Shown in pieces: positions 23,635 through 50,600 of a DNA stretch of 64,000 bases (position 1 is its first letter; every line of letters begins with the position of its first letter). A model generated the notes under the pieces. That model made no database searches and was not told the DNA's origin. It saw only the letters and a list, made by a program, of their open reading frames with translations. Position numbers and translations under genes: made by a program. This stretch comes from Adineta vaga (taxonomy: Eukaryota; Animalia; Rotifera), in NCBI GenBank assembly GCA_021613535.1, contig CP075493.1, positions 16,802,001-16,866,000 on the forward strand, in the 5' to 3' direction.

Positions 23635-26600
23635 GTAAGTTTTTCGAAGAGAATTGCTCCAAACTCCTCGCTTATAAATCTATATGAGTTAAAACTTATA
23701 TATAGCGACAAAAAGACTACAATAAGATTAAGCATCCTTGCCTGCAGCAAAAGAAGTGTAAATTCGCCTAAATTCTTCCAGTAATAGAAGTTCAAGCCCT
23801 ATCCCCCTAATCAATAAGCTACCCAAAAATTCGTGAATGATTGGTAAAAATAGGAGGTCTGGGCTTTATATTACGTACGTGTTTGTTTTTTCTTATGTTC
23901 ATTACTGTTTGGAGAAAAGAAGATTATTGTTCTCTTTTTAATGGTATACACATGGGTAATGTTATTTCATGTTTTTTTCTTTCGTATTCTCAAGATCAAT
24001 TTAGGCAAAGATTAGGAATAAAAACTCCTTTTTTTTTAGAAACAACACGAAATATCGCAAGGAAAACATTTTCGACTTTTTTGAATGTTCACGACTGTAA
24101 AAAAGACAGTTTCTTATAAGATACGACATCGGCGAGATTTGCATTAATTGTGGTTCAATTTTTATTGTAATTTTATGAGGAAGAGTATACGGGAGGATGG
24201 AAACCGACAATCCCAGATTCAGTCACGGAAACTGTTCGCTCTACTACTTTGAAATTTAGCAATACTTTGTTATAGTATACATTTTGAGTACGTTCTAGAT
24301 ACAAAAATACAAAATTTAAGAATTTCCCGGTGCATATCTAGAACGGTTCTGACCTAACTAAAAGATCCCATAATATGACTACAGATCCAAACATGTAAAT
24401 AAATTACATGTACCTTTCTATTCATACTAGAACATATCTATTTCAATACAGGTCATCTGAGATCGTAAAGGGAAGGCTGAAGATGATCATGACTGCTAGA
24501 AATAACAAAAAATACTTGATTGAGTAGTAACTATATACAAAATCATATAGCATACAGAATAATTGTATTGAACTAGATATTTTACTCGTATGAATATACA
24601 TAAGAGTTTGATTAGAGGGTGTAGGTGTGAATATGAATATCAGTGTGGCTCCTATACTCTCACCTTCACCCACACGCACACCCACCCTCAAGATGAAGTG
24701 TACGACGATTGGCAAAACCATTTAAAACGTGAAAAATTTTATTTATCGAATCATCATTTTCCTACTTAGGAGGTACGAGTTTCTGGAAGTCTTTACTCTT
24801 CATCATCTAAAATACACTCAGAATGTATATAGAAAAACCAAATACAAATTTATAAAGAGAGTTGGAAGGCGAATCTTTCAGTAAAAAAATAGGTTGATAG
24901 CTTCTCAATTCAGTAAAATAATTAGAAAATAAAATGCGACATTCCTCATGAAACACCTGTTAATACGTAATTTGTTGGGTAGTTTTGTAGTATTACATAA
25001 AGCCCTAATAAAGATTTGTGAAGTATTTACGGAATTGTTGCGACAGTTTCGTAGTATTACGTGACACTAAAAAAGATTTCAACTGTATTGGAAATGTTGA
25101 AATCCTTTTTAGTCTCTATAATCTAAGTTTTTTTTGCAGTGTATAAAGATAGTAATTGATTATTCCAGGCCCAGCATCATATATGCAAACTAAAATTTGG
25201 TACGATGAACGACGCCGTTTCGATTCCGATGAAGTACAAATAGCAACTTACAATATGCCATTTCTTTATCGTCCTTTCCGTTGTCATACTTTGTCAGCAG
25301 GACAGCTTCGTCATGCTCTTCAACTCATTATCAACAAACATCAATCACTTCGTACATCATTTGTCTTCGACACTGCTAAGAATTTGCTCACACAGCAGAT
25401 CATCGATCAGAAAGCTAACAAAGACAACACGTCTTTAATCATCGAAAGCATCTATGAAACCGATGAACAATTAACTAATATCATGCATGATGAACAGACT
25501 AACTCTGAACTCTTCGATATGTCTCAAGGTCTTGTATTTCGATGTCATATTGTATATTATAAAGAAATCTCCGGAAATGGTCTAATTGGTGAAAAAGATG
25601 CTCTTATTTTCAATTTTCATCATGCTTCATTCGACCTTCCATCAATGGACGTGTTTATTGATGATCTTAATCAAGCTTACACAACAAATCAACTACGAAC
25701 CAATGACGACACTTCGCTACGTTATTTAAATTGTAAATATAAATCATTCGCATACTTACTTTTCATGAAATATCGTTTTTTCTCTGTTTTGTTTAGATGC
25801 TCTCATTGAACAACAAATAACAATGCATGGTGCTAGTATATTTTGGCTTGATACACTTCGTGGATACAATATTGATCAATCTCTACCATTACCATTTGAT
25901 CGGTATCGCCTTTCGACTGAGCCTCGAACAGATCGTGGAACATCTATTATTTTCACTTTTGATCAAGATTTGTCACGTAGTTTTCTTGCTTATGCATTAT
26001 CAAACAATATCAAACCTGAATATCTGACACTAACTACTTATTATGCATTTTTATTCAAGTTAACAAACGGAGAAAAAGATTTGTGTATTGGAATGAATAC
26101 AGATGGGAGATATAGAGATGAATTAAAATCAGTGATTGGAATGTTTGGTAATGTTACTCCATTACGATGTCAATTAGATCCTTCTTGGTCTTTCTCTCAA
26201 TCAACCAATTCTGTTTGTGAAATGGTAACAAATTGTATGAGATATTCTTATTTTCCACTTCAACGTATTCTGAATCAACATTCAAATACTTCAAAACTTA
26301 CATTTCCTGATACATTTTTCGAATATCAGTCTATTGAAAATGAAATGAACAAGAATAAAATAAGTATCGGTGGTTGTTATTTGCATGCTATGCCTTTCTC
26401 AATTAAAACTAGTGAACATGAAATAATGAGTGAACATGATTTTATTCTTAGTATTAAACATGATATGAATATTAATCAACTTTCATGTACAATTAAAGCA
26501 TCACGCGATTTGTTTAATGTAGAAACAATTGATAAAATCTCTCAACGATTTCATGTAATGCTAAATCAATTATTTATATCTGGTGACATTCAAATGAAGA

Positions 26601-29600
26601 AGTCACTCTATGAATTGTCATTGCTAGCATCAGATGAACGATTACTAATGCAATCAATCAATGATACACAAGTATTACTTCCTCCTGTCGTTTGTATACA
26701 TCATCAATTTGTTTATCAAGCAATGAAATATTCACAAAAACTAGCTGTTGAACTTGATGAACAGTCTTTGACATATTCTGAACTTTTACATTATACACAA
26801 TTGTTATCTATGAATCTTTTAAATAATCATTTTTTCACTCCAGGTAAAATTATATGTCAATGTGTAAAGGAAAGTATATCAATGGTGAGTTGAGCGACGG
26901 GATGATTATTTAATTCAGATGAATATTATTGTTTATTAGGTAATTGGTATGATAGCAATCGAGATGGTTGGCAATGTCTATTGTCCCCTTTCACCTCAAG
27001 ATCCTCTAGACAGATTGCATTCATTAATCGAACAAACTCATTGTTGTCTAGTTCTTGTTCACTCAATGACACGAAACAAGTTTGACGATGATTATCTCAC
27101 ATTCAACATTGATACAACGATTAGCATTGACAAGATCGTGAATAATGATTATCTCGATCGGCTGTCGAGTATAAAAGTCACTCCGGAAAGTGTTGCGTAT
27201 GCGGTCTTCACTAGTGGTTCAACCGGTACTCCGAAAGCTGTGAGTTCATGATCCTTTTTATGTAATTGTATGCTATCAATGCCACTCTCTTTGTAGCCTC
27301 AAGTGCGTCATAGAAATTTTACATGCTATATTCATTCACTCATGTTGGCCACTTCTCTCAGCGACATGAACATAGTGATACAATTGGCTGGCTGTTCTTT
27401 TGATTCTCATATCGATGAGATTCTAGGAACACTGATTACTGGCTCCACACTTATCATGCTCCGGCCCGAAGGAAATATGGATTTTGAATACATAGCTACA
27501 GTGTTGACGAAAACGAAGCTCACACACTTGGCTTGTGTACCGAGTTTTTTCGATGGTCTTCTTCTTTTTCTTAGAAATAACGATCGCATAGCTGCTCTGG
27601 AATGCCTTCAGTCACTTTGTAGTGGCGGTTAGTATTTTTTAAAATCAGCTGTGTCCGCATGAAATTTCTGTAATCCTTTTGTTGTAGGTGAAGCTCTTTC
27701 TGTTAAACTGGCAAGTCTTCTCAAAGTCAGTGTGTCTCACAATTGTCAGGTTCTAAATGTCTACGGACCAGCTGAGGCAACAATTGGTTGTACTTCTTAT
27801 CTGATTGATAATACATCCAGCATAATGAGTATACCTATCGGACGACTACTGTCCAACTATACTTGTTTTATTTTCGATGAATTTTCCCAACCTGTCATTG
27901 TAAATCAAGAAGGTGAGCTGCTCGTTGGTGGTGAGGGTATCTTTGTTGGCTATCTTGGCCGGGAAGATTTAAACGACAAAGTACTTTTCGATTTCAACGG
28001 GTCCATATACTATCGTACAGGTGATCTAGTTAAAATAGATAACAATGGTCTTCTTTATTATATTGGTCGAAAAGATTTTCAAATTAAATTACATGGGCAA
28101 CGTATTGAACTTGGTGAAATTGAACGGTGTTTACTCAACACATCCATCTCAGCCTGTGTTGTCATTAAGTGGGGAGATGATCATTTAATTGCTTATGTTC
28201 AAAGTTCTACTATTGACGAGAAACAATTACGTGAATATTGTCAATCTCATTTACCACGGCACATGGTTCCATCAATGTTCATTATCCTAAAACAACTACC
28301 GTTAAATAGTAATGGAAAAATAGATCGAAAACGTCTTCCTTCACCTAATTTGTCGTTATTGACTTCGTCATTACCAAGTGCATCTGATATTCCGCTAAGT
28401 CATTTGGAACAACGTGTGCACGATATATGGTGTGAAATTCTGAAATGTGACGGGCGTTATATGGCAACAAACAAAAGCTTCTTTGCTATCGGAGGTCATT
28501 CTCTTTTGTTTATTAAACTATATAATCGCTATCAAACTTTGTTTGAGTTTGACAGTCGTACATTGTCTATTGGTTTATTTCTCCAAGAATCAACTATTAC
28601 CCAACATGCAAAATTATTGGAAGCAGTCACAACTGAAGGTATCCAAACGAAACAAAGGCATACTTCCGATATAAATCAAATTCAAAAGTTTCAACCCTTT
28701 CCTGTTACAGAAATGCAGCAAGCATATCTTATAGGACGAAAAGGTTTTCTTGAACTTGGCCATGTTTCTTGTTTTCACTATGAAGAATATGACTTGCCAT
28801 CAACATTTGATATTGAACAATTGGAGAAAGCATGGAATTATTTAATTCAACGTCATGAAGCGTTACGTATCATCTTTCCATCTAATACAGAACAAAAAAT
28901 TCTCGAAACAGTGCCTTATTACACTATATCTATATTGGATTTAAATGATATTATGACGGTAGAAGAATTATTAAAAGAACGACGAGAACAACTATCACAC
29001 CAAGTTCAACCAGCGAATCAATGGCCACTTTTTAATATCCAGGTGACTTGTTTTAGTATTGATAACGAATACTATAAACGTTTGCATGTCGGTTTGGATT
29101 TTCTCATCCTGGATTTATGGAGTTTAAAGTTAATTATGAATGAATGGAGTCAATTGTATTTTATTCCAAATATTCCTTTGAAAAATATAAATCTTTCTTA
29201 TCGAGACTATATTTTGATTGAACAACAATTTAAAAATACGACTGATTATATAAATGATAGAAAATATTGGATTGATCGTTTAAATTCCTTTCCATTAGGT
29301 CCTAATTTACCATTACAATGTTTGCCAAATGAAATACATATACAAAGACATTGTAGTTCATCTTTAATATTAGACGGACCAATCTGGCAGAAATTAAAAC
29401 AACGTATTATTGATCATAAATTGACATCAGTTAGCTTTTTAGTATCTATTTATGCTATGGTATTATCTAAATGGAGTGAAAACAAACATTTTGCTTTGAA
29501 TTTACCAATTTTTAATCGATCATCTATTCATCCACAAATAAATGATATAACAGGAGATTTTACAACAACTCTATTATTAGAAATCAATCTAACTGAGTCA

Positions 29601-32600
29601 ATTAATTTCGATCAATTCATTAAAATTGTACAAAAACAGTTACGAAATGATCTTGAACATATATCTTACAATGGTGTATCATTTATTCGTGATTTGATGC
29701 AAATACATCAAACAAGAGAAATAATATTACCATTTGTTTTCACATCTGGAATAGATATACGCGATACAAATGAAAATAATATTCAAGAAAATTTTTTTTT
29801 AGATGAATTACTTGTGTATTCGATTAGTCAAACACCACAAGTTTTTCTCGATCACATTGTATTTGAAAAAGATGAACAATTATTAACCAATTGGATTTAT
29901 GTAGAACATTTATTTCCATCAGAAATAATTAATGACATGCATCGTACATTCATTGACTTACTTCAACAATTGGCGTTGTGCGATGATATGTGGTACAAAC
30001 CTCTTTCGATCTCGTTACCAATTAAACAACTAGAGAGAAGAGTCGATTTTAATCAAACGCAATGGAAATCAAATGTCAAAGAACAATTACTTCATTCATT
30101 CGTCATTGAACAAGCTCAGCAAATACCTCAAGCTTGGGCTGTTTGCACTACAAGCCAAAACTTAACATATGAGCAGCTAATGAATCGCGTTTATTCCTTA
30201 GCATATTATTTACAACAACAACATGACATACAATCTAATCAACTAATTGGTATTCTAATGAAAAAAGGTTGGGAACAAGTCGTTGCTTGTTTATCTATTT
30301 TAATCTCAGGTGGTGCTTTTTTACCTTTGGATATTGATTCACCGTATGATCGCCTTTCTTCAGTAATTCAACAAACTAATGTCAACATTATTCTTACACA
30401 ATCTGATTGTCCTCATAAATTTACACATTTAACAACTATTTCAGTTTCAACATTCTCCAATAATAATTATCCTAAACCATTTCCCTTGAAACAACAATTA
30501 TCAACTGATTTAGCTTATGTTATTTATACATCGGGTTCAACTGGTCAACCAAAAGGTGTTATGGTTAGTCATCAAGCTGTTCTAAATACAATTATTGATA
30601 TGAATTCAAGATTAGAAATTTCTTCTAATGATAGAATATTTGCATTATCTCATTTAAATTTTGATTTATCTATTTATGATATATTTGGAATGTTGATCAA
30701 AGGTGGAACTGTCGTTATTCCAGATCATGGACACTATAAAAATCCTAAACATTGGTATGATATGATGATTAAACATCATGTAACTATTTGGAATAGTGTT
30801 CCAATATTAATGCAAATGTTAGTTGAACATTTAAAACAGAATTATAATCAAACACAATTAAGACATATTTTACTAAGTGGTGACTTAATATCATTATCTT
30901 TACCAAAATCAATAAAAAACACATTTGGTGAACAATTAACGATAACAAGTTTGGGTGGTGCAACAGAAGCATCGATTTGGTCAATTGCTTATACATTACC
31001 AAAAACGATTCCACAAGAATGGAAATCAATTCCATATGGATTACCACTAAGAAATCAACATTATTATGTTTATGATACAAATCTTGATGATTGTCCTGAA
31101 TGGGTCAATGGGGAATTATATATTGGTGGTATTAGTCTTGCTCATGGTTATTGGAATGATCGAAAAACTACAGAATTAAGTTTTATAATTCATCCACGGA
31201 CTGGTGAACGTCTTTATCGAACAGGTGATTATGCGAGATTTATTCCTGATAGTTACATTGAATTTATCGGACGAAAAGATTTTCAAGTTAAAATTCATGG
31301 TTATCGAATTGAACTTGGTGAAATTGAATATCATTTACAACAACATCCAGATATTTATCAAGCGATTGTTACTCAAGATAAAAATTCTCAACAGTTAATT
31401 GGATATATTTTACCACAAACACATTCTCATCATCATAATAAATTTGCTCAATTAGAAACTTTAATTACTGATCCTGTTGAACGTACTAATTTTAAACATG
31501 CAAGACATGGAACGAAACATCATTATGCAGGTGAGCAGAGTCTTGTCTTAACAAAACCGAAACTGACAGAAACATTAATCAATTCATACTATGGAAAAAA
31601 AACATATCGACAATTCACAAATGAAATTATTGAAAAATCGAATATTGAATATTTATTCAACAAATGTTGTATTAATAAGAGAAATATCGACCAAATATAT
31701 GAATGTGGTGTCAATTTCGATACTCTTAGTCACTTGTTATCGTTATTAACACCGATCAATATTTCCACTAAATCTTTACCTAAATATCGCTATGCATCAT
31801 ATGAAAGTCTTTATCCTGTTCAAGTATACATTGAACTTTTCACATCCTTACATAATATATCACCTGGTCTCTATTATCATAATCCAGATCAACACACTTT
31901 AGAATTAATTGATACTTATATCAACTGTAAGAATATCAATACACGTCTACATCTTATTGGACGATCATCTGCTATTGCACCTTTATGTGGAAAAACATTA
32001 GCTAGTCAATTTTGTGTGCTAGAAACAGGTTATATTATGGGATTATTGAAACAAGAGGCAATTAAATTAGGATTGATGTTTAAAAGAACTAATCACGATG
32101 AAATGAAAATGTCCACTTTCAACTTAGATCAGAATGATACTCATTATTGCTTCGAACTTTCATCTGTTAATCAATATGTTTCTGATAATGATTATCCGCG
32201 TTGTATTATTTATCAAAAGTTTACTCGTAAGAGCAAAGATCAATGGTTTACTTACGATGAGAAAAATGAAATTGTCATCCCTCTTGAAGTTGAAGAAGCA
32301 ATAATAGAAGACGATATGCCATTGTCCTTTGATACTGATGATCATAACAAAGCCATATTTCATGAATGTCAAATTGCAATTTTTTTCATCGGACAGTCTA
32401 CAGACAGATTAAATACTGGTATAATATCGCACTTATTGATGGATAGTGGTTTGGAAATGAATATTGGTATGTGTCCAATTGGTGTATCGACGAGTTTACC
32501 AATCAATATTCTTAATGCATTAGATATTGCTCGAGTTCGTAATGTTTCGGATAGGCAGAACATATTATTGCATACACTACTCATCGGAAAAGTGACTAAC

Positions 32601-35600
32601 GAACAAAAATATGAACGCACGATTTCAACCGCTAAATCAATGCCAAATTATAATATACTTCTGAAAACATATTTAAATAAAAAACTTCCAACTTATATGA
32701 TACCGTCATACTTTCTGACTGTCGAGGCATTTCCATTAAGTTCAAATGGTAAAGTTGATCGAAAATCATTACCTAAAACATCGATGACAAATTTGCAAAA
32801 AGAAGATACCTATAGAGCACCAAGTACTAAGTTAGAAAAGAAAATTGCAAACATTTGGTATCAGATATTGGGTAAAGATCAATTATCCCATGATTTGAGA
32901 TCAAACAAATGGGATCGATTACCAATAGATACAAATAAACGATTATCTTCAGATCTTTTCCAGTTAAATGCTCCAACATTTTCTCATCAATTGGGTTCAG
33001 CTAGCTTCTTCAGTGTTGGTGGTAACTCTCTTCTACTTCTTCATTTGTATCAACAATACCAATCACTCTTCAATTTTGATCCTGAGATTCTAACGATCCG
33101 ATCATTCTTTGAATATAATACCATAGCTGAACATGTAAAACTACTGCAAACAGTTGTACCACGTGACATTGAACCAATGCAATGGCAAACGCTGCATATT
33201 AATCAAGGTAAGGTATTGAATGTGGTGCGAAGCACAGCGTTTCCGTATTCTTTCCTGAGTTTTCTTTTTACTCAATGTTGTCAACGTACGCGTCAAAAGT
33301 CTTCATTTAATGTCGCGATCATCTGGAGAAACAAAACTTAGCGAAACTGTGTTGAAAGGCGACCCGAAACTAGGAAGATCAAACCGGTTATATCCGTTTT
33401 CTGATGTTCACTAGGGGAGTGTTTGATTTACGAATAGTTCAGGAAAACAACGAAGTTGAAAGAATTTACGCCTCGAGTGCTTAAAATTATGGTAGAAAAC
33501 CTTAACCGTCACCCATTGGAAACAATTATTTTTATATATCTCAGCTGATTGCTAATACTAAATGAGTCATTTAAATAATTAATCAATCAATCAATAGTGC
33601 TCATTAGAAGCAACTTGATAAGTAACAAGAAACGTTCGTCATTTCTACTCACTGGACTCTCGACATCAGAAATTCTTTTTTCTCTCCGCAATCTCTTTCT
33701 TAAGTAGAGGACGTAGATGTTCCTGTGCCTGTCGATAAAATTCAGTAGTAAATACACCACTCACACTCACATCTATCATCCAATAATCAAGTTCATCCCT
33801 CCACCCATGATTTCATCCATCACCCAGATCTATACCCCAGCTTTCATCGATGTTTTTCTGACCTTTGGCCCTGACAGAAATATACGAACAAACTATTTCT
33901 TTTCATAGGACCCTCCTTACAGTCAAGGAAATAATAGAGTTCTTGTAGCAACGGATTTTGTTATGTCAGTACGTTAAATTTTTCGACAATTTCACTCAAC
34001 AGATTCAGTATAATGTAATCTACTTAATAGAATCGGCAGATAGGAAATTCCATCTGTAGACTGTCAAGTGGCTAATGACAGTGTTCTTTTCATGTTCAAC
34101 TGTTGTAACGAACACTCTTTTTTTACAGCACACATCGATTTCTCGATAACCTATGCTTATAGTATCGCATTGTGTAGCCGACTTTTCAATACCATCAAGT
34201 TAGTTCTGAAACATTTTTTGAAGAGAAGCTCAAAACAAAGTTTGACAGAATATTATTTCCGTTATATGTATCCGAACGATTTTTACTCTTATCAAAAATA
34301 CATAAGATATTATGTGCTATTGCTCCACTTTCTTTAGCTCCATTGCCATTGACCACGTATCAATGGAAGAATCAAAGCTATACCTTGCTGATTTCACAGA
34401 TTTATAATACCCATTCTTCTGCTCTCTCTACATAGTATAGGTAAAATAGGAATATCGGTCAAAATATAGGATTTATCAAAAATATAGGAAATATAGGTCG
34501 GTCCGATCCCAGATAATTGTATATTGATTTATTTGCAACATATTAAAATATTCGATGATATAACATTTAGGTCTTGCATCTTTTGCTCAAGAGCGTATCT
34601 TCCTCGATGAACAAGTTCGCTTCTCAAATGAAGTTGCCATCTACAATGAATTATCAGTTCTACGACTTGTTCAAGGTTCATTATCGATCGATCGTTTATT
34701 AAAAGCACTTCGATATATAATAAGCAAACATAATATATTACGATCATCTCTCATTTTTGACAATGAAGATAGTACTTTAAAACAATATGTTACTCAAAAC
34801 CATCTATCATTCTCATTAGTCAATGAACAAACATTTGAAAATGAAAGTGAACTTTTCGATATTATCCATAAAGTTACAAGCAATCCAACTTTATTTAATT
34901 TGTCCGAAGGCCGAGTGTTTCATTGTGAGATTATTCGACAACAGAACTTAACTAATGAAAATAATGATAAGGAATTGATTAGAGAATCCGATGTTGTTAT
35001 ACTGGCTTTTCATCATGCAGCATCTGATCGATCAAGTTTCGCCGTCTTTTTCGAAGATTTGAGTTTTGCTTACAATAATAATAATGACACAACATGGTTT
35101 GAAGATGAGGATTCAATACAATACATTGATTATAGTGTACATGAACGTTTAATGGATATGACATTGTCTCGTGAATTTTGGCATTTTCAACTTGACGGTT
35201 ACAATCCCGAGCGTCCTTTAGCATTGCCAGTTGATCGACATCGTTCATCTGCTGATCAACGATCAGGTTTATCTTCTACAACTTACATATCGTTCAGCAA
35301 AGAAATTTCGAAATCATTTCTCGATTATGCATCTTCACATCAAGTCACACCATTTCAGTTAGGATTGGCTACATTTTATATATTTTTATTCAAGTTAACT
35401 CATGGTCAAACTGATCTATGTGTTTCTTGTCTTAATGCCAATCGATACAGAAATGAAATACAGAATATGTTTGGAATCTTTTTTTCCACATTACCATATC
35501 GATTTCAACTCGACGGTAACTGGTCATTTGATGAAGTTGTAAAACGTGTGCGAGAAATATGTTTATCAATTCTTGAACATTCTCACTATCCAATACAGTC

Positions 35601-38600
35601 TATTTTTGCTAATTTTCATTTCAATCCGTTACATATTCCGTTTGTTCAGTCGACGTTTGATCTTATAACTGTTTCTCCAGAAAACATTAATTTATCTTTA
35701 AACGGCGCAAGTTTAGAAGACGTACCAATGAAACTATCGTCCGAAGTAGCCAAAGTTGATTTCTCGGTTAGATTTGTTTACAATCCAGTTTCGGACGATA
35801 ATCAATTGTCGTGCTCATTCATCGGCTCAAGAGATTTATTTGACCGAACGGCAATTGTAACTATGGGTGTTAGATTAAAACACCTTTTTAACCAACTGTT
35901 TTCATCTGATTCAACTAGTACTTGGATTGATTCAATGTATATGCCTGTCACTAAATTTGATCTCATCTTACCCGAAGAAACCGAAGAAATCAAAAATGTT
36001 GTTTTTTGTCGACAGTCCATTGTTGTTAACGAAGGTATGTTTATGTGCTTTACTGTTGAAATATTTCATATACGTAAGGTACATTTAAATTATGTGGAGT
36101 TTTTATTCTAGGGAAAAAAACTCAAAAATATTATGACAAGCTGTCATCTTTTGAAGAGAACATTATACTTTGACTAGTTTTTACTTTGAGAAGACATTGT
36201 AAAAGATTCTGTCTGTAATTGCTCAATTTATTAGGTTCTTAAAATTGCTGAAGTTACAAAATATCAAATAATCTCGTGCGTAAAACACGAAAGCTTCCTA
36301 AGTCATAAGTTTAATCAAACATTTTGTTGGCTAAAACGTACATAAAATTCCATACTTTTGAGTTGAAACAGCAGCAGCAGTAGGACATACTAACTTGATG
36401 TTCAATGCATTTGAGTTTTATTAAAATATATTATTCAAACGATAGGCATTGAACAACTACTATCGCCATACTTTGTACAAAAGAAATACTACGAATATCA
36501 GCATTTCTCATAATTTTCTCAATAATAGACTAGTTCCGGCATACGATTAAAAATCAAGAGCTATTGATAGAATCGATAATATCCCATTTTTTTAGCATCA
36601 GCATCCTATGCTCAAGCGCGTATTTGGCTTGATGAACAAACTCGTTTCGGTTCTAACAAACCACAAGTAGCAATCTACAATATGCCATTTCTTTATCGTC
36701 TCTCATCCACACATACTTTATCAGTTAAACAATTTTATCAAGCTCTTCAGCTCATTATCACTAAACATCAAGCACTTCGAACATCATTGATCTTTGATTC
36801 AAACAAGAATCAACTCTTACAACGAGTCAATGACTTGAACGATAGTCACAAACCATTGTTTACGTTTACAGAAAGTACTTTTCAAACAAATGAACAACTC
36901 GATGAGATAATGTATGACGAGAAACGCAATTCTCAATATTTCGATCTTACTCAAGGACTTGTCTTTCGATGTCATCTCATTTACTACAAACAAATATCTT
37001 CAAATGATCTTCTTTGTGATAAAGATGTTATTATTTTCAATTTTCATCATGCATTGTTCGATTTTCCATCGATGGATATCTTTCTTCGTGATCTCAATCA
37101 AGCTTATACAACAAATCAACTATCAACTGATGATAACATGAATCTACGATATCTTGACTGTAATGATCAATATTCTTCTTTTCTATTTGATTTCATCTAT
37201 GTGTTTTTGTTCAACTATTTAGACGCTGTTATCGAACAAGAAATGTCAATGACTGGTGCAAGTCTATTTTGGCAAGATGTTCTTTATGATTGTAATTTTG
37301 ATCGATCTTTACCATTACCATTTGATCGACATCGTCTTGCTAATGAATATAATACTGGTCGTGGAACATCTGTCTCTTTTGATTTTGGTGAAGATCTTTC
37401 ACAAGCATTTCTTAATTATTCGTTATTGTACAATATTAACCTTGAATATCTGATACTTTCTTGTTATTATGCTTTCTTATTCAAATTATCAAATGGAGAA
37501 AAAGATCTTTCTATTGGAATTAACATTGATACTCGATCTAGAGATGAACTTAAATCGTTGATCGGAATATTCCAAAATGTCATTCCATTACGATGTCAAT
37601 TAGATCCTCATTGGTCTTTTCATCAATTAATTATATACTCTCAAGAGATAATGAGAAATAGTTTGAAATATTCATATTTTCCTCTTCAACGCATTCTCAA
37701 TCAACATGTCAATAGTTCAAGACCTGCATTTCTTGATATATTCTTTGAATTTCAATCAAATCAAAACAAATCTTGTAAGAATGAGATTATCATTGATGAT
37801 GTTCATCTCTATCCTATTTCCTATTCGAATCAAATCAATAGAAAGGAAGTTGTGAATAAATATGATTTCTCTCTTATTATTCAACATGATTCGAATATTA
37901 ATCAACTATCATGTACAATTAATGCATCACTTGATCTATTCAATGAAAACACAATTGACAAAAGTACACAACGATTTCATTTTATGTTGCAACAATTATT
38001 TAGATCTACCGATGAATGGATGAAGAAACCAATCTATGAATTATCATTCATATTGTCAAATGAAAGACTACTCGTGGAATCTTTGAATAACACACAAATA
38101 TTATTTCCTTCTTCCACTTGTATACATCATGAATTTGTTTTTCAGGCAATGAATTATTCACAAAAACTAGCAATTGAACTTGATGAACAATCTCTAACTT
38201 ATTCTGAACTTTTACATTATGTTCAATTGTTTGCTATTGATCTAATAGACAATCTATCATTCCAGGTGACATTGTTTGTCAATGTGTAGAACGAAGTCTA
38301 TCGATGGTAGGTTGATTGAAAAGTAATTTTTACTAAAATCGATCGAATATTGATCTTGATTAGGTAATTGGTATAATGGCAATCGAGATGAGTGGTGGTA
38401 TCTATTGTCCATTATCACCTCGAGATCCACCACATCGTTTGTGTGCACTTGTTCAACAAATTCAGAGTTGTCTTGTTCTTGTTCATTGGTCGACAAGAAC
38501 TAAATTCAACGATAATATAATTTCACTTGACATCAGCTCGATGATGGCTGACATTGATATCAAATGTGACATTGATGTCGATCGACTCTCAAATGTGCTA

Positions 38601-41600
38601 GTCACATCGAACAGCGTATCCTACACTATTTTTACAAGTGGTTCAACTGGAACACCGAAAGGAGTAAGTACATTCTACATCTAGTCCACAATCGACAATG
38701 TAACTTTTTCTTTAGGTGCAAATTCGACATTCTAATTTTCTTGGATGTATTCGATCTCTGGTTGATATAGAACTTTTTACATGCAATGATACAATTATTC
38801 AAATGGCAAGTTGTTCGTATGATGTACACGTACAAGAAATCGTAGGAGCACTGATTGCCGGTTCAAGCATTGTGATGCTTCGTTGTCAAGGGAATATGGA
38901 TCTAGAATATGTCCTTAGGGTTTTAGATGAAAAACAAGTTTCATACATGCAAAGTGTTCCAGCTTATTTCAGTAATATGTGTAATTTTCTCCTGGAACAC
39001 AAGTATGAAAATCTTGTTGCATTACGCACAATTGATATCGGAGGTAGAATGATTTTAAAATTTAGTCAGAAAGTGTCAATTTTTATGTTTTCTAGGAGAT
39101 GTTAGTACTATTCAACTGTTCAAGAAATTAACTAGTAATATCTTCGAGAATGTGAGAGTAGTGCATTTATATGGGCCGGCAGAGACAACTGTTGACTCCA
39201 CTTTTCATGTCGTGAATCTTCAAATAGATACAACGCATGTTTCACTCGGATGCCCATTACCTAACTATACGTGTATGATTCTGGATGAATTGTCGCAACC
39301 TGTTGTAATCGATCAAGAAGGTGAGCTAGTTGTTGGAGGAGTAGGTGTCTCTGCAGGATATCTTGGACGTGATGAATTGACTGCGAATGCATTTTTCAAT
39401 TATGACGGATACAAATATTACCGAACAGGTGATCTAGTTCGATTGGGTAGCAATGGTCTTTTATATTATCAAGGAAGAAAAGATCATCAAGTCAAACTTC
39501 ATGGACAACGAATTGAATTAGGAGAAATTGAGCGATGTTTACTTCAGACATCTGTTACAGCTTGTGTTGTCATCAAATGGGGCGACGACCATTTGGTTGC
39601 TTATGTTCAAAGTTCTACTATTGATGAGAAACTATTACGTGATCATTGCCAATCTCATTTACCGTCTCACATGATTCCATCGATGTTCATCGTTCTGGAC
39701 AAACTACCATTGAATGCAAATGGAAAAGTTGATCGGAAACTTCTTCCTGCACCTAATTTCTCTCAACTCTCATCAAAATATCTAAAACATGATGTTCAAA
39801 TTTTAGCACCAAATAGTGAAGTTGAAATTATCATTCATAAGATTTGGTGTGATATTTTTCATCAAAATCAAATCTCAATTGATACAGATATCTTTACTAT
39901 TGGTGGTCATTCACTACTTCTTATGCAGATTAATCAGTTATATAAAGCTGCATTTCATTTGGAAAAAAAAACTTTCTCTATTGCTGATCTTTTCGGACAT
40001 CCAACAATTGTCGGCCATGCTCGCCTCATTGATCAGGCTGCTACTAGAACGATAATGTTGAGTGATCAATGGACATCGTTAAAACTCATTCAAGGTAAAG
40101 AAACAAGCTTTCCTAAATATTATTCTGTTCTACACTTCATTAATATCTAGCTAGAGCATCATTTGCTCAAGAACGTATAATTTTGGATGAACAAATTCGA
40201 TTTTCTTCGAAAGATGACAATAACATGTATATTATTCCATTACTTTATCGTATTTCATCTTCTACTACCAACATATCAATCGTTCGATTGCAACAAGCGC
40301 TTCAGGCTGTCATTATCAAACACAGTATTCTACGAACAGCATTTTATCTTGATACAAATGGTACTATTATGCAACATTGTTTAGATGCACAAGTTATCTT
40401 CGATAAAATGATATCCAATAACGTTTCACTATTAAATGTTTATGATGTAGATAATGATATTCGTAGTATCACTGTGAAAATAAATGAAATCTTAAATAAT
40501 TCTGATTTATTTGATTTATCAAAAGGACGTGTTATTTCTTGCCATATTCTTCGTCAATATCATGCCTACGATGACCGTTCATTCGGCAACGATGATCGAT
40601 TGACGAAAAATGATTTTATTTTATTTAGTATTCATCATTCTGTATTTGATGGAACATCAGTATCAACCTTCTTGCGTGATCTTTATCTTGCTTATGACAA
40701 TAATGCTAACTTACCTATAGATGAGAACATGCTTCAATATGTTGATTATTCAGTTTATGAACGTCTAATAGATATGACATCTTCTCGTGAGTTTTGGCAC
40801 TCTCAATTCCAAGGATATAATATCCAACGTCCCTTATCATGGTCATTTGATCGACATCGATCATCCATTGGTCAGCGATCAGGTTTAGCTTCTATAGTCT
40901 GCATCTCATTCAACAAAGAAGTTGCTTCATCATTTCTTAACTATGCATCTTCACATCAAGTCACACCATTTCAGTTAGGATTGGCTACATTTTATATATT
41001 TTTATTCAAGTTAACTCATGGTCAAACTGATCTATGTGTTACTTCTGTCAATGCTAATCGATATCGAAGTGAATTACAAAATCTCATTGGAATGTTTGTT
41101 TCAACATTACCTTGTCGTCTACAATTAGACTCTCATTGGTCATTCGGTGAAGTTGTAAAACATGTTCGAGAAAAATGTTTATCAATTCTTGAACATTCTC
41201 AATATCCATTACAGCAAATGCTCGCTGATTTCCATCTTAATCAATCAAATGTTCCATTCCTTGAAACAATCTTTGACTTTATTACTTTATCTTCAAACAC
41301 CAGTCTAATATCTTTTGATGGTGCAACCGTTGAACAAGAGTCAGTGGAAGAATTTTTTGAAGTAGCTAGGTTTGACTTTCTAATGAGATTTATTTATGAT
41401 CCAACATCAGGTAATGATGAACTGTCTTGTTCTTTGGTGTGTTCACGTGATTTGTTTGACCAAACAACCATCAAACAAATGGTTCGAAGATTTCAAAATC
41501 TTTTTGAGGAAATTTTTGCGGTGAACTTTAATATTACGTCGATTGAGAAATTTTGTATTATCTTACCAGAGGAAGCAGAAGAAATGCAAACAACAGTCTT

Positions 41601-44600: not shown

Positions 44601-47600
44601 GATGAAATATAGGAAAAAAAAGTCAACTTCAAAGTTGTTTTGTGGAGAATTAATCGAGTGTTTCACTGAAAACTAAACATTTTTCAGGGATATAGGTGGA
44701 AATGGGAGTTGATGTATACGTTTCTTTTGGGTATGTTTTTCTGAATTGTTGGTAATGCGTGGCAGTGTTAATTAGTTTCATAAACAGTATTTATACATCA
44801 GTAGGTAGTGTTGCTTTAGGGGAAAGCACTAAGCTGGCAGTTATATTAGCTAAGCAGATGTTTTTGGTGGAAATTTGTAGTCATAGAATACGACAAAGGA
44901 CGATATTTGTTGTTCTGGTATGTGTAGTTTTTTGAAGAACACTCGCTTTTGTCGTTGCTCTCGTTATCAAGGTGATGGATGTCGTAGATTTTTGCTTATA
45001 ATACTTTCTGATGGAGTTATGAGGTATTGAAATAAGCAAAATACTATCTGCTTAATATGTGGAGGATTTAAAAATACGAATTTTACTGGGAGTTAGGTAA
45101 TATATATTCATAAACAGCGACAAATAATTTGAATATAGTGTTTCACGCTCATCTAATACGTCTTTTTGGTTGTTCATAATATTTATTTTACGATTTATGT
45201 CGGAGTATGGTGAAAATCGTTTTCAATCACCAAATAAAATAGAAAATGGAAAAAATTTTTAATAAATTGCTATGGAGACTGATCTCTTTTACTGATATTC
45301 ATAATTTTTGGATAGTTTTACCAAAACTAATTAGACAAGGTTAGCGATAAAATGGACAGATGCAGCATGTTCTTTACGCGATTTCTAGTCAACCTGACCT
45401 CTAGTTTTCCAGCAGTCACGACTCGACCATAGGATTCAATTGAACAATACGGAATGTTAGAACAGATAGGTTCTTTTAAAATGAGACGTCAGCAAGCTTT
45501 CTCCCAAGTGTTTCGGCTGAAAAACATGAGACTTACGGAAGTTTCTAAAAGAACTTTCACGAAATTATGAAAGTATCTCTAATGAATCTGTACCTATCAT
45601 CGGCATATCCTAGAGTCACCAATACTATTTTTTCAGTAACTGTTTTATTCACAAGACTTTTGAAACCGTCGTAGAAGATGGCGGTTAGATATTTAGTGAT
45701 CAACGTCTATCGAGTTATTGCTGAACAACCTTAGAAATATCCATCCTCTTGAAATAATCATTTTCAACAATTTCCAAAGAGAACCATCGACCAAACAGCT
45801 ATCTTAAATGTGCTATGATTCACTATGTAAACAAAACTTCATTCATGTCTATTCGAGCAGCAAAGTCATTTTTTTAAAGTTCCATATACACTATAAATAA
45901 ATCAAGATAACTCCTGTTTCAGTAATTATAAAAAATAAATTCTTGTATCTTATAGGATTAGCATCCTATGCTCAAGCTCGTATTTGGTTAGATGAACAAG
46001 TTCGATTCAATCTCGATCATTCACAAGTAGCAATCTACAATATGCCATTTCTTTATCGTCTCTCATCCACACATACTTTATCAGTTAAACAATTTCATCA
46101 AGCTCTTCAACTCACTATCACTAAACATCAAGCACTTCGAACATCATTGATCTTTGATTCAAACAAGAATCAACTCTTACAACGAGTCAATGACTTGAAC
46201 GATAGTCACAAACCATTGTTTACGTTTACAGAAAGTACTTTTCAAACAAATGAACAACTCGATGAGATAATGTATGACGAGAAACGCAATTCTCAATATT
46301 TCGATCTTACTCAAGGACTAGTCTTTCGATGTCATCTCATTTACTACAAACAAATCTCTTCAAATGATCTTCTTTGTGATAAAGATGTTATTATTTTCAA
46401 TTTTCATCATGCATTGTTCGATTTTCCATCGATGGATATCTTTCTTCGTGATCTCAATCAAGCTTATACAACAAATCAACTATCAACTGATGATAACATG
46501 AATCTACGATATCTTGACTGTAATGATCAATATTCTTCTTTTCTATTTGATTTCATCTATGTGTTTTTGTTCAACTATTTAGACGCTGTTATCGAACAAG
46601 AAATGTCAATGACTGGTGCAAGTCTATTTTGGCAAGATGTTCTTTATGATTGTAATTTTGATCGATCTTTACCATTACCATTTGATCGACATCGTCTTGC
46701 TAATGAATATAATACTGGTCGTGGAACATCTGTCTCTTTTGATTTTGGTGAAGATCTTTCACAAGCATTTCTTCTATACACATTGTCAAATCACATCGAA
46801 CCAATACACATAGCACTAGCATGTTATTATACTTTCTTATTTAAATTGACCAATGGACAAAGGGATTTATGTATTGGAACAAATACAGATGGTCGATACA
46901 GAGAAGAGTTGATGTCAGTGATTGGAATGTTTGTCAATGCTATCCCACTACGATGTCAGTTAGATCCTCATTGGTCTTTTCATCAGCTTGTCGAACGCGT
47001 TGTAGAAATAGAGACAAATAGTATAAAATATTCATATTTTCCTCTTCAGCGTATTCTTGCACTACATCCCAATACATCAAAAGCGGCATTTCTTGAGATA
47101 TCTTTTGTTTTTCATGCTATTGAAAATGAAAGTATCAACAATGAAATAATGATTGGTGAAAGTCAACTGGATTCTTTGTCAACAACGTCGATCAAAATTA
47201 GTGAAAATGAAATAATGAGTAAGTTCGATTTTTCTCTTAACATTCAACATGATCTCAATACTAATCAACTATCATGCACAATTGATGCATCACTTGACTT
47301 ATTCAATCTGGATACAATTCATCAGATTACACAACGATTCCATTTAACATTGGAACAATTATTTGCCTCTCTTGATGATCGCATCGACAAACCAATATGT
47401 AACTTATCATTAACATTATTGAATGAAAGGCTGCTGATGAGTTCTATGAATAATACACAAGTATCATTTTCTTCCATGTCTTGCATTCATCATGAATTTG
47501 TTAGACAAACAGTGAAATATCCACAAAAACTAGCAGTTGAACTTGATGAACAGTCTCTTACATATTCAGAATTATTATATTGTATACAGAGATTATCGTT

Positions 47601-50600
47601 ACATCTCCTAATTAACTATAATATCGTTCCAGGTAATATTATTTGTCAATGTGTAGAAAGAAGTTTATCAATGGTAAATTGATCAAAGAGAAAGTAATAT
47701 TAATGTAGATATATATTGTTGTTCCTTTAGGTGATTGGTATGATGGCAATTGAGACGGTCGGTTGCGCATATTGTCCATTATCACCCCAAGATCCTCTAC
47801 ACCGTTTATATTCACTTATTCGACAAACTCGAAATTCTGTTCTTCTAACACACTATTTGACCAAAACAAAATTTAATAGCGATATTGTTTTATTTGATAT
47901 TGACACCGTATTGATTGATAATGGCATGGAAAACGATGACAAAATTTATCCACTATTAGATGTTTTAGTCGTACCTGACAACGTAGCTTATGTCATTTTT
48001 ACAAGTGGCTCAACTGGAACACCAAAAGCGGTTAGTAATAAAAATCGATATTGTGAAAAAATAATGAACTTTTCTTCATCATTTGAAGGCTCAAGTTCGA
48101 CATAAGAATTTCACTAAATGTATACAGTCTTTGATTCTTAACGACATATTTAATATATATGATATAGTTGTTCAAATGTCACGTTGTTCATTCGATATTC
48201 ATGTTCAAGAAATATTAGGTACATTAATTAGTGGTGCTTCATTAATCATGCTTCATCCTAGAGGTACTTTGGATTTTCAATACATATCAGAGGTTCTTAA
48301 TGACAAACAAATTACATACATGCACTCTGTACCAAGTCTTCTTTACAGTTTCTTCACTTTTGCTGCACAACGAAATAATCAGTATGCTCCAAAATATCTT
48401 CGATCACTTTGTAGTAGTGGTGAGTTAAGATTCAATAGTTTTCAATTTTCTAATTGATTTTTGTTCTACTCATGCAGGTGAAGCATTTGCTATTAAACTG
48501 TTTGATGTAACTAAAAACATCGATATAAGAAACTGCCATATATGGAATCTCTATGGTCCAGCTGAAACAACCATTGATTCCACTAGTCGTCGTGTGAATA
48601 TTATAGCTGATAGAGAAAGCATACCGATTGGTGATCCACTGTCTAATTATATATGTCTAGTCTTAGATGAATTCTTACAATCTGTTGTGATCGATCAAGA
48701 AGGTGAATTAGTTGTTGGAGGAGTTGGAGTCTTTGCAGGATATCTTGGACGTGATGATTTGACACAGAAAGCACTCATTGAGATCGATGGGGAATTATTC
48801 TATCGAACAGGTGATCTTGTTCGAATGGATAAGAAAGGTCTTTTATATTATCAAGGAAGAAAAGATCATCAAGTCAAACTTCATGGACAACGAATTGAAT
48901 TAGGAGAAATTGAGCGATGTTTACTTCAGACATCTGTTACAGCTTGTGTTGTCATCAAATGGGGCGACGACCATTTGGTTGCTTATGTTCAAAGTTCTAC
49001 TATTAGTGAAAACAATTTACGTGATCATTGTCAATCTCACTTACCACCTCACATGATTCCATCGATGTTCATCATTCTTGATAAACTACCGTTGAACATA
49101 AATGGAAAAGTTGATCGGAAACTTCTTCCTGCACCTAATTTCTCGGTAAACTTGTCTCCATCAGCTAAACTTCATACTCCGCAAAATCACTTAGAAGAAG
49201 CCGTGCACGATGTATGGTGTGAAATTCTTCAGTGGATTGGAAAAGAGATATCAACTACTGTCAGTTTCTTTAGTATTGGTGGCCATTCACTTCTCTTCAT
49301 TAAACTTTATCATCGTTATCAATTTATATTTAATTTTGATAACCATGCACTTTCTATTGCACCCTTTCTCCAAAAGCCAACTATTGTTCAACATTCACAA
49401 TTGCTCCAGACAATCATAATAAAAAACATTCGCTCAATGAAATGGCATCCACTCCACATTAAACAAGGTAATAATTTTCTTTTCATATGGATATTTTTTT
49501 CAATCGATTGAAATATTCAATAATAAAACATTTAGGTCCTGCATCTTTTGCTCAAGAGCGGATCTTCCTCGATGAACAAGTTCGCTTCTCGAATGAAGTT
49601 GCCATCTACAATGAATTATCAATTCAACGACTTGTTCAAGGTTCATTATCGATCGATCGTTTATTAAAAGCACTTCGATATATAATAAGCAAACATAATA
49701 TATTACGATCATCTCTCATTTTTGACAATGAAGATAGTACTTTAAAACAATATGTTACTCAAAACCATCTATCATTCTCATTAGTCAATGAACAAACATT
49801 TGAAAATGAAAGTGAACTTTTCGATATTATCCATAAAGTTACAAGCAATCCAACTTTATTTAATTTGTCCGAAGGCCGAGTGTTTCATTGTGAGATTATT
49901 CGACAACAGAACTTAACTAATGAAAATAATGATAAGGAATTGATTAGAGAATCCGATGTTGTTATACTGGCTTTTCATCATGCAGCATCTGATCGATCAA
50001 GTTTCGCCGTCTTTTTCGAAGATTTGAGTTTTGCTTACAATAATAATAATGACACAACATGGTTTGAAGATGAGGATTCAATACAATACATTGATTATAG
50101 TGTACATGAACGTTTAATGGATATGACATTGTCTCGTGAATTTTGGCATTTTCAACTTGACGGTTACAATCCCGAGCGTCCTTTAGCATTGCCAGTTGAT
50201 CGACATCGTTCATCTGCTGATCAACGATCAGGTTTATCTTCTACAACTTACATATCGTTCAGCAAAGAAATTTCGAAATCATTTCTCGATTATGCATCTT
50301 CACATCAAGTCACACCATTTCAGTTAGGATTGGCTACATTTTATATATTTTTATTCAAGTTAACTCATGGTCAAACTGATCTATGTGTTACTTCTGTCAA
50401 TGCCAATCGATATCGAAGTGAATTACAAAGTCTCATTGGAATGTTTGTTTCAACATTACCATATCGATTTCAGCTGGATGGTAACTGGTCATTTGATGAA
50501 ATTGTAAAACGTGTACGAGAAATATGTTTATCAATTCTTGAACATTCTCAATACCCATTACAGCATATGCTCGCCGATTCGCATCTGAATCAGCCGAATG

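What the first reader, a model, noticed from the sequence alone, without database searches (positions are those of the whole stretch)
27688..33207. The Cy-A-Ox block is intron-free and begins where other modules have their T|C intron: a second-wave graft
Seen: modules 1, 3, 4 and 5 share four short introns at the same positions (RYL(D/N)^Y, SM^V, TPK(A/G)^, (G/S)^G). Module 2 has none of them and sits in a 5.5-kb exon. The other T domains end ...(I/N/K)Q-G^intron, while T1 ends ...SDINQ and runs directly into IQKFQPFP at ~28680. The C-terminal half of T2 reverts to the host T-domain style (YQSLFNFD...LHINQG^). Inference: a bacterial module was recombined into an already domesticated, intron-bearing NRPS, implying layered HGT and module-level engineering.
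Basis: partly seen in the sequence, partly recalled or inferred. Interest (0 to 1): 0.82.

Follow-up and report, generated by a model that had tools for sequence, protein, structure and literature searches.

The report
Intron-free thiazole module in rotifer NRPS
A bdelloid rotifer peptide-synthetase gene carries a bacterial-type thiazole-making module in one 5.5-kb exon between intron-bearing modules, but this cassette is old and shared across rotifer genera, so it is not a fresh bacterial graft.

Summary
Modules 1, 3, 4 and 5 share four short GT-AG introns plus one after each carrier (T) domain. Exon 27688-33207 is one open frame: A1 tail, T1, then Cy-A-Ox-T.

- The cassette is old. This Adineta vaga genome has at least six copies, and A. 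ricciae, A. steineri and Rotaria have it too. All seven copies read as DNA (five loci here, two Rotaria contigs) are intron-free and end at the same T|C' intron.
- Codon usage matches the host. The best bacterial identity is 37-43%.
- T2 has a seam: cassette-type helix 1, a 28-84-residue filler, then a family-type core. The seam occurs in all five T2 domains read (three A. vaga loci and both Rotaria contigs) and points to one ancient fusion at the known T-domain breakpoint.
- The left junction at the intron position occurs only in this orthogroup, so it is a later internal rearrangement.
- In ML trees A2 sits among bacterial Cy-linked A domains and the intron-bearing A domains form one rotifer clade. 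AU tests do not reject a single rotifer clade (p 0.14, 0.18).

The introns show that A2 is not a copy of the amplified module. They do not show when it arrived, so layered HGT stays unproven.

The scan noted this cassette before (s1-494308) and homogenised NRPS modules elsewhere in this genome (s1-502044, s1-482554).

The parts
25156..27687 (+). Module 1 C domain and A core in four exons (25156-25732, 25797-26884, 26940-27239, 27297-27627), separated by introns i1 25733-25796, i2 26885-26939, i3 27240-27296 and i4 27628-27687
   Evidence: Pfam Condensation and AMP-binding on the pieces. GT-AG junctions restore the conserved peptides.
27688..33207 (+). The 5,520-nt exon: A1 tail, T1, Cy, A2 with embedded Ox, T2
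   Evidence: Open frame 27663-33338. Acceptor at 27687/27688 and donor GTAAGG at 33208. Pfam AMP-binding_C, PP-binding, Condensation and AMP-binding.
27688..28679 (+). A1 tail (A10 motif at 28311) and carrier domain T1 (FFxxGGHS at 28479), family type, ending ...DINQ
   Evidence: 63-88% nt identity to modules 3-5 in places.
28680..30000 (+). Heterocyclisation (Cy) domain. The Cy1 motif starts at 28698 and DxxxxD lies at 29097.
   Evidence: BmdB 7LY7 E 3.9e-179 over Cy-A; Cy structures 5T3E, 5T7Z and 7RY6 also match.
30100..31390 (+). A2 adenylation core. Motif positions: A1-type at 30162, A3 at 30525, A8 at 31269.
   Evidence: Pfam AMP-binding 1.7e-81. Placed among bacterial Cy-linked A domains.
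31392..32744 (+). Ox (FMN oxidase-like) insert between A8 and A10. The BmdC-like core is about 31710-32150, and the A10 motif follows at 32745.
   Evidence: A profile of six rotifer copies matches the BmdC NRPS oxidase at E 1.3e-11. Pfam Nitroreductase reaches only E 0.17.
32790..33207 (+). T2: cassette-type helix 1, a filler of about 34 extra residues (about 32872-32990), and a family-type core (FFxxGGNS at 33006) ending ...HINQ-G
   Evidence: Helix 1 to GG distance is 52 residues, against 17-19 in ordinary T domains. The core is at least 50% identical to family T domains.
33208..34570 (+). T2|C' intron, 1,363 nt, swollen by dispersed-repeat fragments
   Evidence: Donor shown and acceptor ...TTTAG|GT. 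Dispersed-repeat matches elsewhere in the genome (41 places listed, one the query itself). The same intron is short in P2 and in Rotaria.
34571..36030 (+). C' condensation domain that follows the cassette in every copy
   Evidence: Pfam Condensation 1.6e-40. HHxxxD motif. 93-96% nt identity to the C' at 49504 and 63415.
36580..40150 (+). Module 3 (C-A-T) with i1, i3, i4 and the T|C' intron at 40095-40150. A 4-nt deletion near 38255 shifts the frame.
45901..49535 (+). Module 4 (C-A-T) with i1-i4 and the T|C' intron at 49468-49535
51302..54878 (+). Module 5 (C-A-T) with i1-i4 and the T|C' intron from 54812. An 8.6-kb insertion sits at its acceptor.

Best explanation
Exon 27688-33207 encodes the end of module 1 plus a complete thiazole-forming module. 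Its steps, inferred by homology to bacillamide BmdB/BmdC, are: Cy condenses and cyclises, A2 loads cysteine, the embedded Ox oxidises thiazoline to thiazole, and T2 carries the product.

The Cy-A-Ox cassette is an old, bdelloid-wide unit that moves and duplicates as a block and has never acquired introns.

The surrounding C-A-T modules belong to a different family. They all descend from one module that already had the four introns and the T|C' intron. That module was then amplified and kept similar by gene conversion.

The intron contrast therefore records genealogy: the cassette is not a copy of the amplified module. It does not record order of arrival.

The cassette is joined to the family by one ancient recombination seam inside T2, in loop 1 next to the FFxxGGxS motif. 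The seam is present in all five T2 domains read, in both genera.

The left junction, exactly at the intron position, arose later within Adineta. A family-type carrier domain replaced the cassette's own upstream carrier and most of its linker.

Status of each step:
- Shown: the anatomy, the age, the seam and the derived left junction.
- Inferred: the chemistry and the direction of the rearrangements.
- Undecided: whether cassette and family came from bacteria in one transfer or two.
For: Copies and age:
- At least six Cy copies occur in this genome, each in an open frame of 1851-3293 aa.
- Paralogues P3 and P4 show all four upstream introns, P2 shows i2-i4 (its i1 exon was not found), and all three share the same exon end.
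- Two Rotaria contigs show the same long exon, which starts at i4 and ends ...HISEG^ before C'.
- Identity is 73% to A. ricciae, about 65% to A. steineri and about 56% to Rotaria. The best bacterial identity is 37-43%.

Composition:
- GC3 is 0.14-0.22 in the cassette and 0.21-0.28 in the family modules.
- RSCU correlation is 0.92 with the family modules and 0.95 with an unrelated host ORF.

Family modules:
- They form one rotifer-only clade: 125 A tails at support 0.984, and SH-aLRT 98-99.
- Modules 3-5 are 92-100% identical in stretches, introns included.

A2: 40 rotifer sequences form one clade (0.993), inside a group of 199 made of bacterial Cy-linked A domains plus this clade (0.971).

T2 seam:
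- The distance from helix 1 to GG is 45-101 residues in all five T2 domains read, against 17-19 in the ten other T domains tabulated.
- T2 helix 1 matches the cassette-type carriers and lacks the family VH..WC signature.
- The T2 core is family type.

Left junction:
- Only the window copy, P2 and A. ricciae P0002 have ...(I/V)NQ plus 5-6 residues before the Cy start.
- Most other copies that could be read show a DE..RY.P-like linker behind a different carrier.

Chemistry: Cy-A matches BmdB at 3.9e-179 and Ox matches BmdC at 1.3e-11.
Against:
- The locus looks battered. There is a frameshift in module 3, TE-laden gaps of 1.4, 4.3 and 8.6 kb, and tandem C'-C domains. This copy may not be expressed as one gene.
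- The seam argument rests on short segments, a helix 1 of about 16 residues and a core of about 65. The filler could be a simple loop expansion.
- In the A tail, the cassette is closer to bacteria (62%) and less diverse internally (minimum 69%) than the family (45%, minimum 20%). That would also fit a later arrival of the cassette.
- AU tests leave the position of the family clade open.
Confidence: 0.55

Rival explanations
1. A separate, later transfer brought a Cy-type assembly line into bdelloids, and it was then recombined into a member of the already intron-bearing family (layered HGT).
For: - Cassette and family have different A and T lineages in ML trees.
- The T2 seam places a family-type core and the T|C' intron behind a cassette-type helix 1. 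The simplest reading is that the intron was already there.
- The cassette is nearer to bacteria and shallower than the family.
- C' has no close non-rotifer relative: the best is about 116 bits, 29% identity, among 1.84 billion representatives.
- Bdelloids are known to have acquired some NRPS/PKS separately (PMC11258130).
Against: - No donor can be named for either part. Identities are 33-43% for both.
- AU tests do not reject one rotifer clade for both A types (p 0.136 and 0.176).
- Cys-specific A domains are constrained, so smaller divergence need not mean a younger age.
- Gene conversion is rampant in this family and could have spread the T|C' intron after a fusion.
- Both parts are present in Adineta and in Rotaria.
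Confidence: 0.25
2. One transfer of a bacterial hybrid NRPS that already contained both module types, with no later fusion. T2 is native and its filler is only a loop expansion. Introns happened to arise only in the module that was later amplified.
For: - Bacterial NRPSs often mix Cy modules with ordinary C-A-T modules (domain lists).
- Long intron-free stretches are normal in the family modules too: C' is 1.5 kb and A tail plus T is 1 kb.
- The AU tests allow a common rotifer origin of both A types.
Against: - T2 helix 1 is of the cassette type while its core is of the family type, and the filler lies exactly between them in all five T2 domains read.
- The tandem cassette gene has an inner carrier domain joined at the same loop without any filler. 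This shows that the loop is a real recombination point.
Confidence: 0.12
3. Module 2 once had the shared introns and lost them, for example by recombination with a reverse-transcribed mRNA.
For: None beyond the bare absence of introns.
Against: - All seven copies read as DNA, in two genera, lack them.
- A2 is not a member of the intron-bearing A clade.
- The neighbouring introns i1-i4 and T|C' are retained in the same genes.
Confidence: 0.03
4. Bacterial contamination or a chimeric assembly.
For: The domain types are bacterial.
Against: - The same exon contains the family-type A1 tail and T1 and is bounded by spliceosomal introns.
- GC is 30-31%.
- The same layout occurs at five loci of a chromosome-level assembly and in three other species.
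Confidence: 0.01

Closest known systems
Bacillamide synthetase module BmdB (Cy-A-PCP) with its oxidase BmdC (PDB 7LY4-7LY7)
   Same: Cy-A aligns end to end with BmdB (E 3.9e-179). The Ox insert matches BmdC (E 1.3e-11). The implied chemistry is the same: cysteine to thiazoline to thiazole.
   Different: Here the oxidase is embedded in the A domain between A8 and A10 rather than being a separate protein. The host is an animal, and the module lies in a gene with spliceosomal introns.
Bacterial Cy-A-Ox-PCP modules with an oxidase inside the A domain (EpoB, MtaD type; architecture recalled from memory)
   Same: Same domain order and same position of the Ox insert. The EpoB Cy structure 5T7Z matches at 5e-66. 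Bacterial hits with Nitroreductase plus Cy plus A domains reach 37-41% identity.
   Different: Identity is only about 40%. T2 carries a long filler, and its core belongs to a rotifer-specific carrier family.
Horizontally acquired NRPS/PKS genes of bdelloid rotifers (Nowell et al. 2024, PMC11258130; PMC10531068)
   Same: Same organism group. These genes are subtelomeric, duplicated and recombining. Most condensation domains form one bdelloid clade, and no such genes are found in monogononts.
   Different: Searches of those papers for the word stems 'heterocycl' and 'thiazol' found no relevant hit, and 'intron' occurs only once, in another context. So they do not appear to describe a Cy-A-Ox cassette, its intron-free state or the carrier-domain seam.
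XUT recombination breakpoint inside T domains (Evolution Inspired Engineering of Megasynthetases, bioRxiv 10.1101/2022.12.02.518901)
   Same: A natural breakpoint at or next to the FFxxGGxS motif, in loop 1 before helix 2. The T2 seam and the seam of the inner carrier in the tandem cassette gene lie in that loop.
   Different: That breakpoint was described in bacteria. Here the junction is imprecise, with a 28-84-residue filler, and lies in an animal gene family.
Homogenised NRPS modules elsewhere in this genome (scan notes s1-502044, s1-482554)
   Same: Modules 3-5 here also share 92-100% identical stretches, introns included, with diverged islands between them.
   Different: Those genes were described without a Cy cassette. 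Here a cassette that takes no part in the homogenisation sits among the homogenised modules.

Membership tests
NRPS heterocyclisation (Cy) domain | DxxxxD motif in place of the HHxxxDG of condensation domains | tested here: met
   The motif is read at 29097. The neighbouring C and C' domains have HHxxxD instead.
NRPS heterocyclisation (Cy) domain | N-terminal Cy1 motif FPxTxxQxAYxxGR and full-length similarity to solved Cy domains | tested here: met
   The motif starts at 28698. Matches to BmdB, 5T3E, 5T7Z (EpoB) and 7RY6 (HMWP2) range from E 1e-54 to 1e-179.
Cysteine-activating A domain of Cy modules | Groups with A domains that follow Cy domains | tested here: met
   The rotifer A2 clade lies inside the bacterial Cy-linked group: FastTree 0.97 and SH-aLRT 99-100.
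Cysteine-activating A domain of Cy modules | Specificity-pocket residues for Cys, and activation of Cys | not tested
   The pocket code was not extracted with a tool. Activity needs an ATP-PPi exchange assay.
NRPS-embedded FMN oxidase (Ox) domain | An insert of about 400 residues in the C-terminal part of the A domain, homologous to nitroreductase-fold NRPS oxidases | tested here: met
   The insert lies between A8 (31269) and A10 (32745). The profile of six copies matches BmdC at 1.3e-11. Pfam PF00881 alone is below its cut-off (E 0.17).
NRPS-embedded FMN oxidase (Ox) domain | FMN-binding residues and oxidase activity | not tested
   No fold or residue check was run. Activity cannot be tested with these tools.
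Recent (second-wave) horizontal transfer | Foreign composition or codon usage | tested here: not met
   GC is 30-31% and GC3 is 0.14-0.22. RSCU correlation is 0.95 with a host ORF.
Recent (second-wave) horizontal transfer | Absent from related species and from paralogous loci | tested here: not met
   Present at five loci here and in A. ricciae, A. steineri and Rotaria.
Recent (second-wave) horizontal transfer | High identity to a donor lineage | tested here: not met
   The best bacterial identity is 37-43%.
T-domain (XUT-type) recombination seam | Breakpoint in loop 1 next to FFxxGGxS | tested here: met
   The filler lies between helix 1 and the motif in all five T2 domains read. Spacing is 17-19 residues in the ten other T domains tabulated.
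T-domain (XUT-type) recombination seam | The two sides have different nearest relatives | tested here: inconclusive
   Helix 1 resembles cassette-type carriers and the core resembles family carriers. The segments are too short for a supported tree.

The most novel reading that the evidence does not exclude
Bdelloid rotifers shuffle whole NRPS modules among resident genes at a few fixed joints: loop 1 of the carrier domain and the exon end before the T|C' intron. An intron-free thiazole cassette of separate bacterial origin has been plugged into different intron-bearing assembly lines several times. This would be a natural animal counterpart of XUT-style engineering, layered on more than one transfer.
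Probability: 0.25. Interest if true: 0.7.

Novelty: new member of a known kind. Interest (0 to 1): 0.45.

Why it matters
- It places a full thiazole-forming NRPS module in an animal genome. In the two papers on rotifer NRPS genes that I read, searches for the relevant terms found no description of such a module.
- It shows that shared intron positions can serve as a pedigree of NRPS modules. Modules with the introns are copies of one founder, and the cassette is not.
- It corrects an attractive but unsafe inference. An intron-free block inside an intron-bearing gene need not be a late arrival.
- The carrier-domain seam is a natural example, in an animal, of the recombination point that engineers now use in bacteria.

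Tried and rejected
The intron-bearing A domains were analysed only through their last exon (148 and about 225 residues). That limits the power of the trees and of the AU tests.
- Donor hunting: word searches with both halves of the long exon gave only 33-43% bacterial identities from many phyla.
- Closest relatives of C': the exhaustive search found no close non-rotifer relative, and none of the listed best-scoring C domains has a Cy motif within 1,700 residues upstream. The idea that Cy-A-Ox-T-C' came as one recognisable bacterial unit could not be tested.
- Recent gene conversion of T1 from modules 4/5: rejected, because nt identity is only 0.53-0.71.
- A hidden in-frame intron in the T2 filler (32872-32928): rejected, because it is not conserved in P2 and the filler frame is open in all five T2 domains read.
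- Epimerase identity of the post-T domains: rejected.


Full report
**What the window is**

The window is 30-36% GC. It lies on contig 1 of a six-contig, 100.8-Mb assembly. Protein hits and earlier scan notes identify the organism as the bdelloid rotifer Adineta vaga.

From about 22 kb to the window end, the plus strand carries a chain of NRPS domains split by short introns:
- C' (22053-23684)
- C-A-T (module 1)
- Cy-A-Ox-T (module 2)
- C'
- C-A-T (module 3)
- C'
- C-A-T (module 4)
- C'
- C-A-T (module 5)
- C' (from 63447)

The domains after each carrier domain have the HHxxxD motif and match condensation regions, not epimerases. I call them C'.

**The observation**

- In module 1 the introns are i1 25733-25796, i2 26885-26939, i3 27240-27296 and i4 27628-27687.
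- Modules 3, 4 and 5 have introns at the same codons.
- T2, T3, T4 and T5 are each followed by an intron right after ...Q-G.
- The long exon is 27688-33207, open from 27663 to 33338, with donor GTAAGG at 33208.
- T1 ends ...DINQ at 28679 and the Cy domain follows without a break.

Module 3 has a 4-nt deletion near 38255, so its i2 site cannot be read in frame.

**What module 2 is**

- The Cy domain has the DxxxxD motif and the N-terminal Cy motif.
- Cy-A aligns end to end with bacillamide BmdB (E 3.9e-179) and with other solved Cy modules.
- A 450-residue insert lies between A8 and A10. It matches the NRPS thiazoline oxidase BmdC when a profile of six rotifer copies is used (E 1.3e-11). Pfam alone does not reach its threshold.

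By homology this is a cysteine-loading, thiazole-forming module. The chemistry is inferred, not shown.

**The cassette is old and is always intron-free**

The genome holds five further Cy copies:
- 80% identity, 1.1 Mb away on contig 1 (P2)
- 62% and 56% identity on contig 5 (P3, P4)
- two copies in tandem inside one 3293-aa open frame, 14-20 kb from the end of contig 1 (P5)

P3 and P4 have the same upstream introns i1-i4; P2 shows i2-i4, and its i1 exon was not found. In all three, a long exon starts at i4 and ends ...(Q/E)G before a C' domain.

Predicted proteins of A. ricciae (73%), A. steineri (about 65%) and Rotaria (about 56%) contain the cassette. Two Rotaria contigs fetched as DNA show the same long exon with the same start and end. 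So the layout predates the Adineta/Rotaria split.

The best bacterial matches are 37-43% identical. Codon usage does not differ from the host: GC3 is 0.14-0.22, and the RSCU correlation is 0.95 with an unrelated host ORF and 0.92 with the other modules. Nothing marks this as a recent arrival.

**The intron-bearing modules are copies of one founder**

- Modules 3-5 share 92-100% identical DNA stretches, introns included. Module 1 is 65-88% identical.
- In a tree of the last-exon part of the A domain, 125 tails form one clade (0.984): 123 rotifer tails plus two from one unnamed metagenome protein. IQ-TREE gives SH-aLRT 98-99.

Shared introns are therefore inherited by duplication or spread by conversion. 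They say that A2 is not a copy of that founder. They do not say when A2 entered the genome. Long intron-free stretches also occur inside the family modules: C' is 1.5 kb and A tail plus T is 1 kb.

A2 and 39 other rotifer sequences form one clade (0.993). It sits inside a group of 199 made of bacterial A domains, mostly Cy-linked, plus this clade (0.971). IQ-TREE support is 99-100. The predicted result is obtained.

It does not separate the hypotheses, because a Cys-specific A domain would sit there after one transfer or after two. The family clade also hangs on a long branch. AU tests do not reject a tree with all rotifer A tails together (p 0.136 on 150 columns, p 0.176 on 227 columns).

Only single-exon segments were used.

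**The right seam**

All ordinary carrier domains have 17-19 residues between the end of helix 1 and the GG of the FFxxGGxS motif. Every T2 that could be read has 45-101.

T2 helix 1 is of the type found in the cassette's own carriers: the upstream carrier in Rotaria and P5, and the inner carrier of the tandem gene. It lacks the family signature VH..WC. From a few residues before FF onward, T2 is a family-type core, at least 50% identical to family carriers. The T|C' intron follows.

The inner carrier of the tandem gene is joined at the same loop without any filler. This matches the natural T-domain breakpoint described for bacterial NRPSs.

The seam is present in all five T2 domains read (three A. 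vaga loci and both Rotaria contigs), so one ancient fusion is the simplest reading. The segments are short, so I rate this as good but not conclusive.

**The left junction is derived**

Only the window copy, P2 and the A. ricciae orthologue have a family carrier ending ...(I/V)NQ followed by 5-6 residues and the Cy start. Most other copies keep a longer linker ending in a DE..RY.P-like motif. This follows a second family carrier type in P3 and most A. steineri proteins (P4's linker is more diverged), and a cassette-type carrier in Rotaria and P5.

So the coincidence with the intron position is real, but it belongs to one orthogroup within Adineta. It reflects a later swap of the upstream carrier among rotifer genes. 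It is not the entry point of bacterial DNA. It is not a recent conversion either: nt identity to modules 4/5 is only 0.53-0.71.

**One transfer or two**

Both parts look bacterial and equally distant:
- A1 tail plus T1: 33-39% identity
- cassette: 37-43% identity
- C': no close non-rotifer relative among 1.84 billion representatives; the best single domain scores about 116 bits at 29% identity

In the A tail, the cassette is closer to bacteria (62% against 45%) and less diverse (minimum 69% against 20%) than the family. This fits a later arrival. It fits equally well the tight constraint on Cys-specific domains and the diversification of the family.

The literature reports that most bdelloid condensation domains form one clade, that a few genes are separate recent gains, and that monogononts have none. 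I could not order the two arrivals.

**State of this locus**

- The T2|C' intron is 1,363 nt and contains dispersed-repeat fragments.
- The 4.3-kb gap at 41.6-45.9 kb holds a repeat of about 0.9 kb with many copies.
- An 8.6-kb insertion sits at the acceptor of the T5|C' intron.
- Module 3 is frameshifted.
- The deposited gene model starts at a methionine inside the Cy motif and skips the first 135 residues of C'.

This copy may be decaying, or it may be several transcription units.

**Verdict**

Module recombination, a separate pedigree for A2 and no intron loss all hold. A recent second wave does not, and layered transfer remains unproven.

Noticed in passing
window 38250-38265 versus 52970-52990: Module 3 lacks 4 nt relative to module 5 just upstream of intron i2. 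This shifts the frame at the C-A linker. It is either a dead module or an assembly error.
   Followed up: partly
window 54812-63446: The T5|C' intron has a normal donor and an acceptor-like TTTAG at 54878. After that, 8.6 kb of unrelated sequence follows before a second TTTAG and the C' exon at 63447. It looks like a large insertion at the acceptor, with the acceptor motif duplicated.
   Followed up: partly
window 41634-45901, mainly 44250-45220: The gap between C' and module 4 holds a dispersed repeat of about 0.9 kb with at least 17 copies at 75-85% identity across all contigs.
   Followed up: partly
window 34571-38286, 49536-53032 and 22053-26884: Two complete condensation domains, both with HHxxxD, stand in tandem (C' then C) before each A domain. 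In paralogue P4 and in Rotaria, C' leads directly into an A domain. So the tandem looks like a product of module insertion.
   Followed up: partly
G000 contig 1, about 5000-30000, minus strand (L017-L019): A subtelomeric gene has a 3293-aa exon with two near-identical Cy-A-Ox units in tandem. Its loading A domain lacks i3 and i4 but has its own intron in the A6 region.
   Followed up: partly
L007 (G000 contig 3, 6821183-6825430): A weak Cy-like match (32%) lies inside an open frame of 7164 aa. This is a giant NRPS reading frame without introns, at 36% GC.
   Followed up: no
L023 9062-9600: In one Rotaria copy the A tail upstream of the cassette has decayed core motifs. An example is the A8 region. 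It is only 29-37% identical to anything else and may be a dead loading domain.
   Followed up: no
window 28713-33206 plus 34981-36108: The deposited gene model (1873 aa) starts at a methionine inside the Cy1 motif and joins T2 to the middle of C'. It is probably mis-annotated.
   Followed up: yes
window 7177-11103, minus strand: An open frame of 1308 aa has no Pfam match.
   Followed up: no
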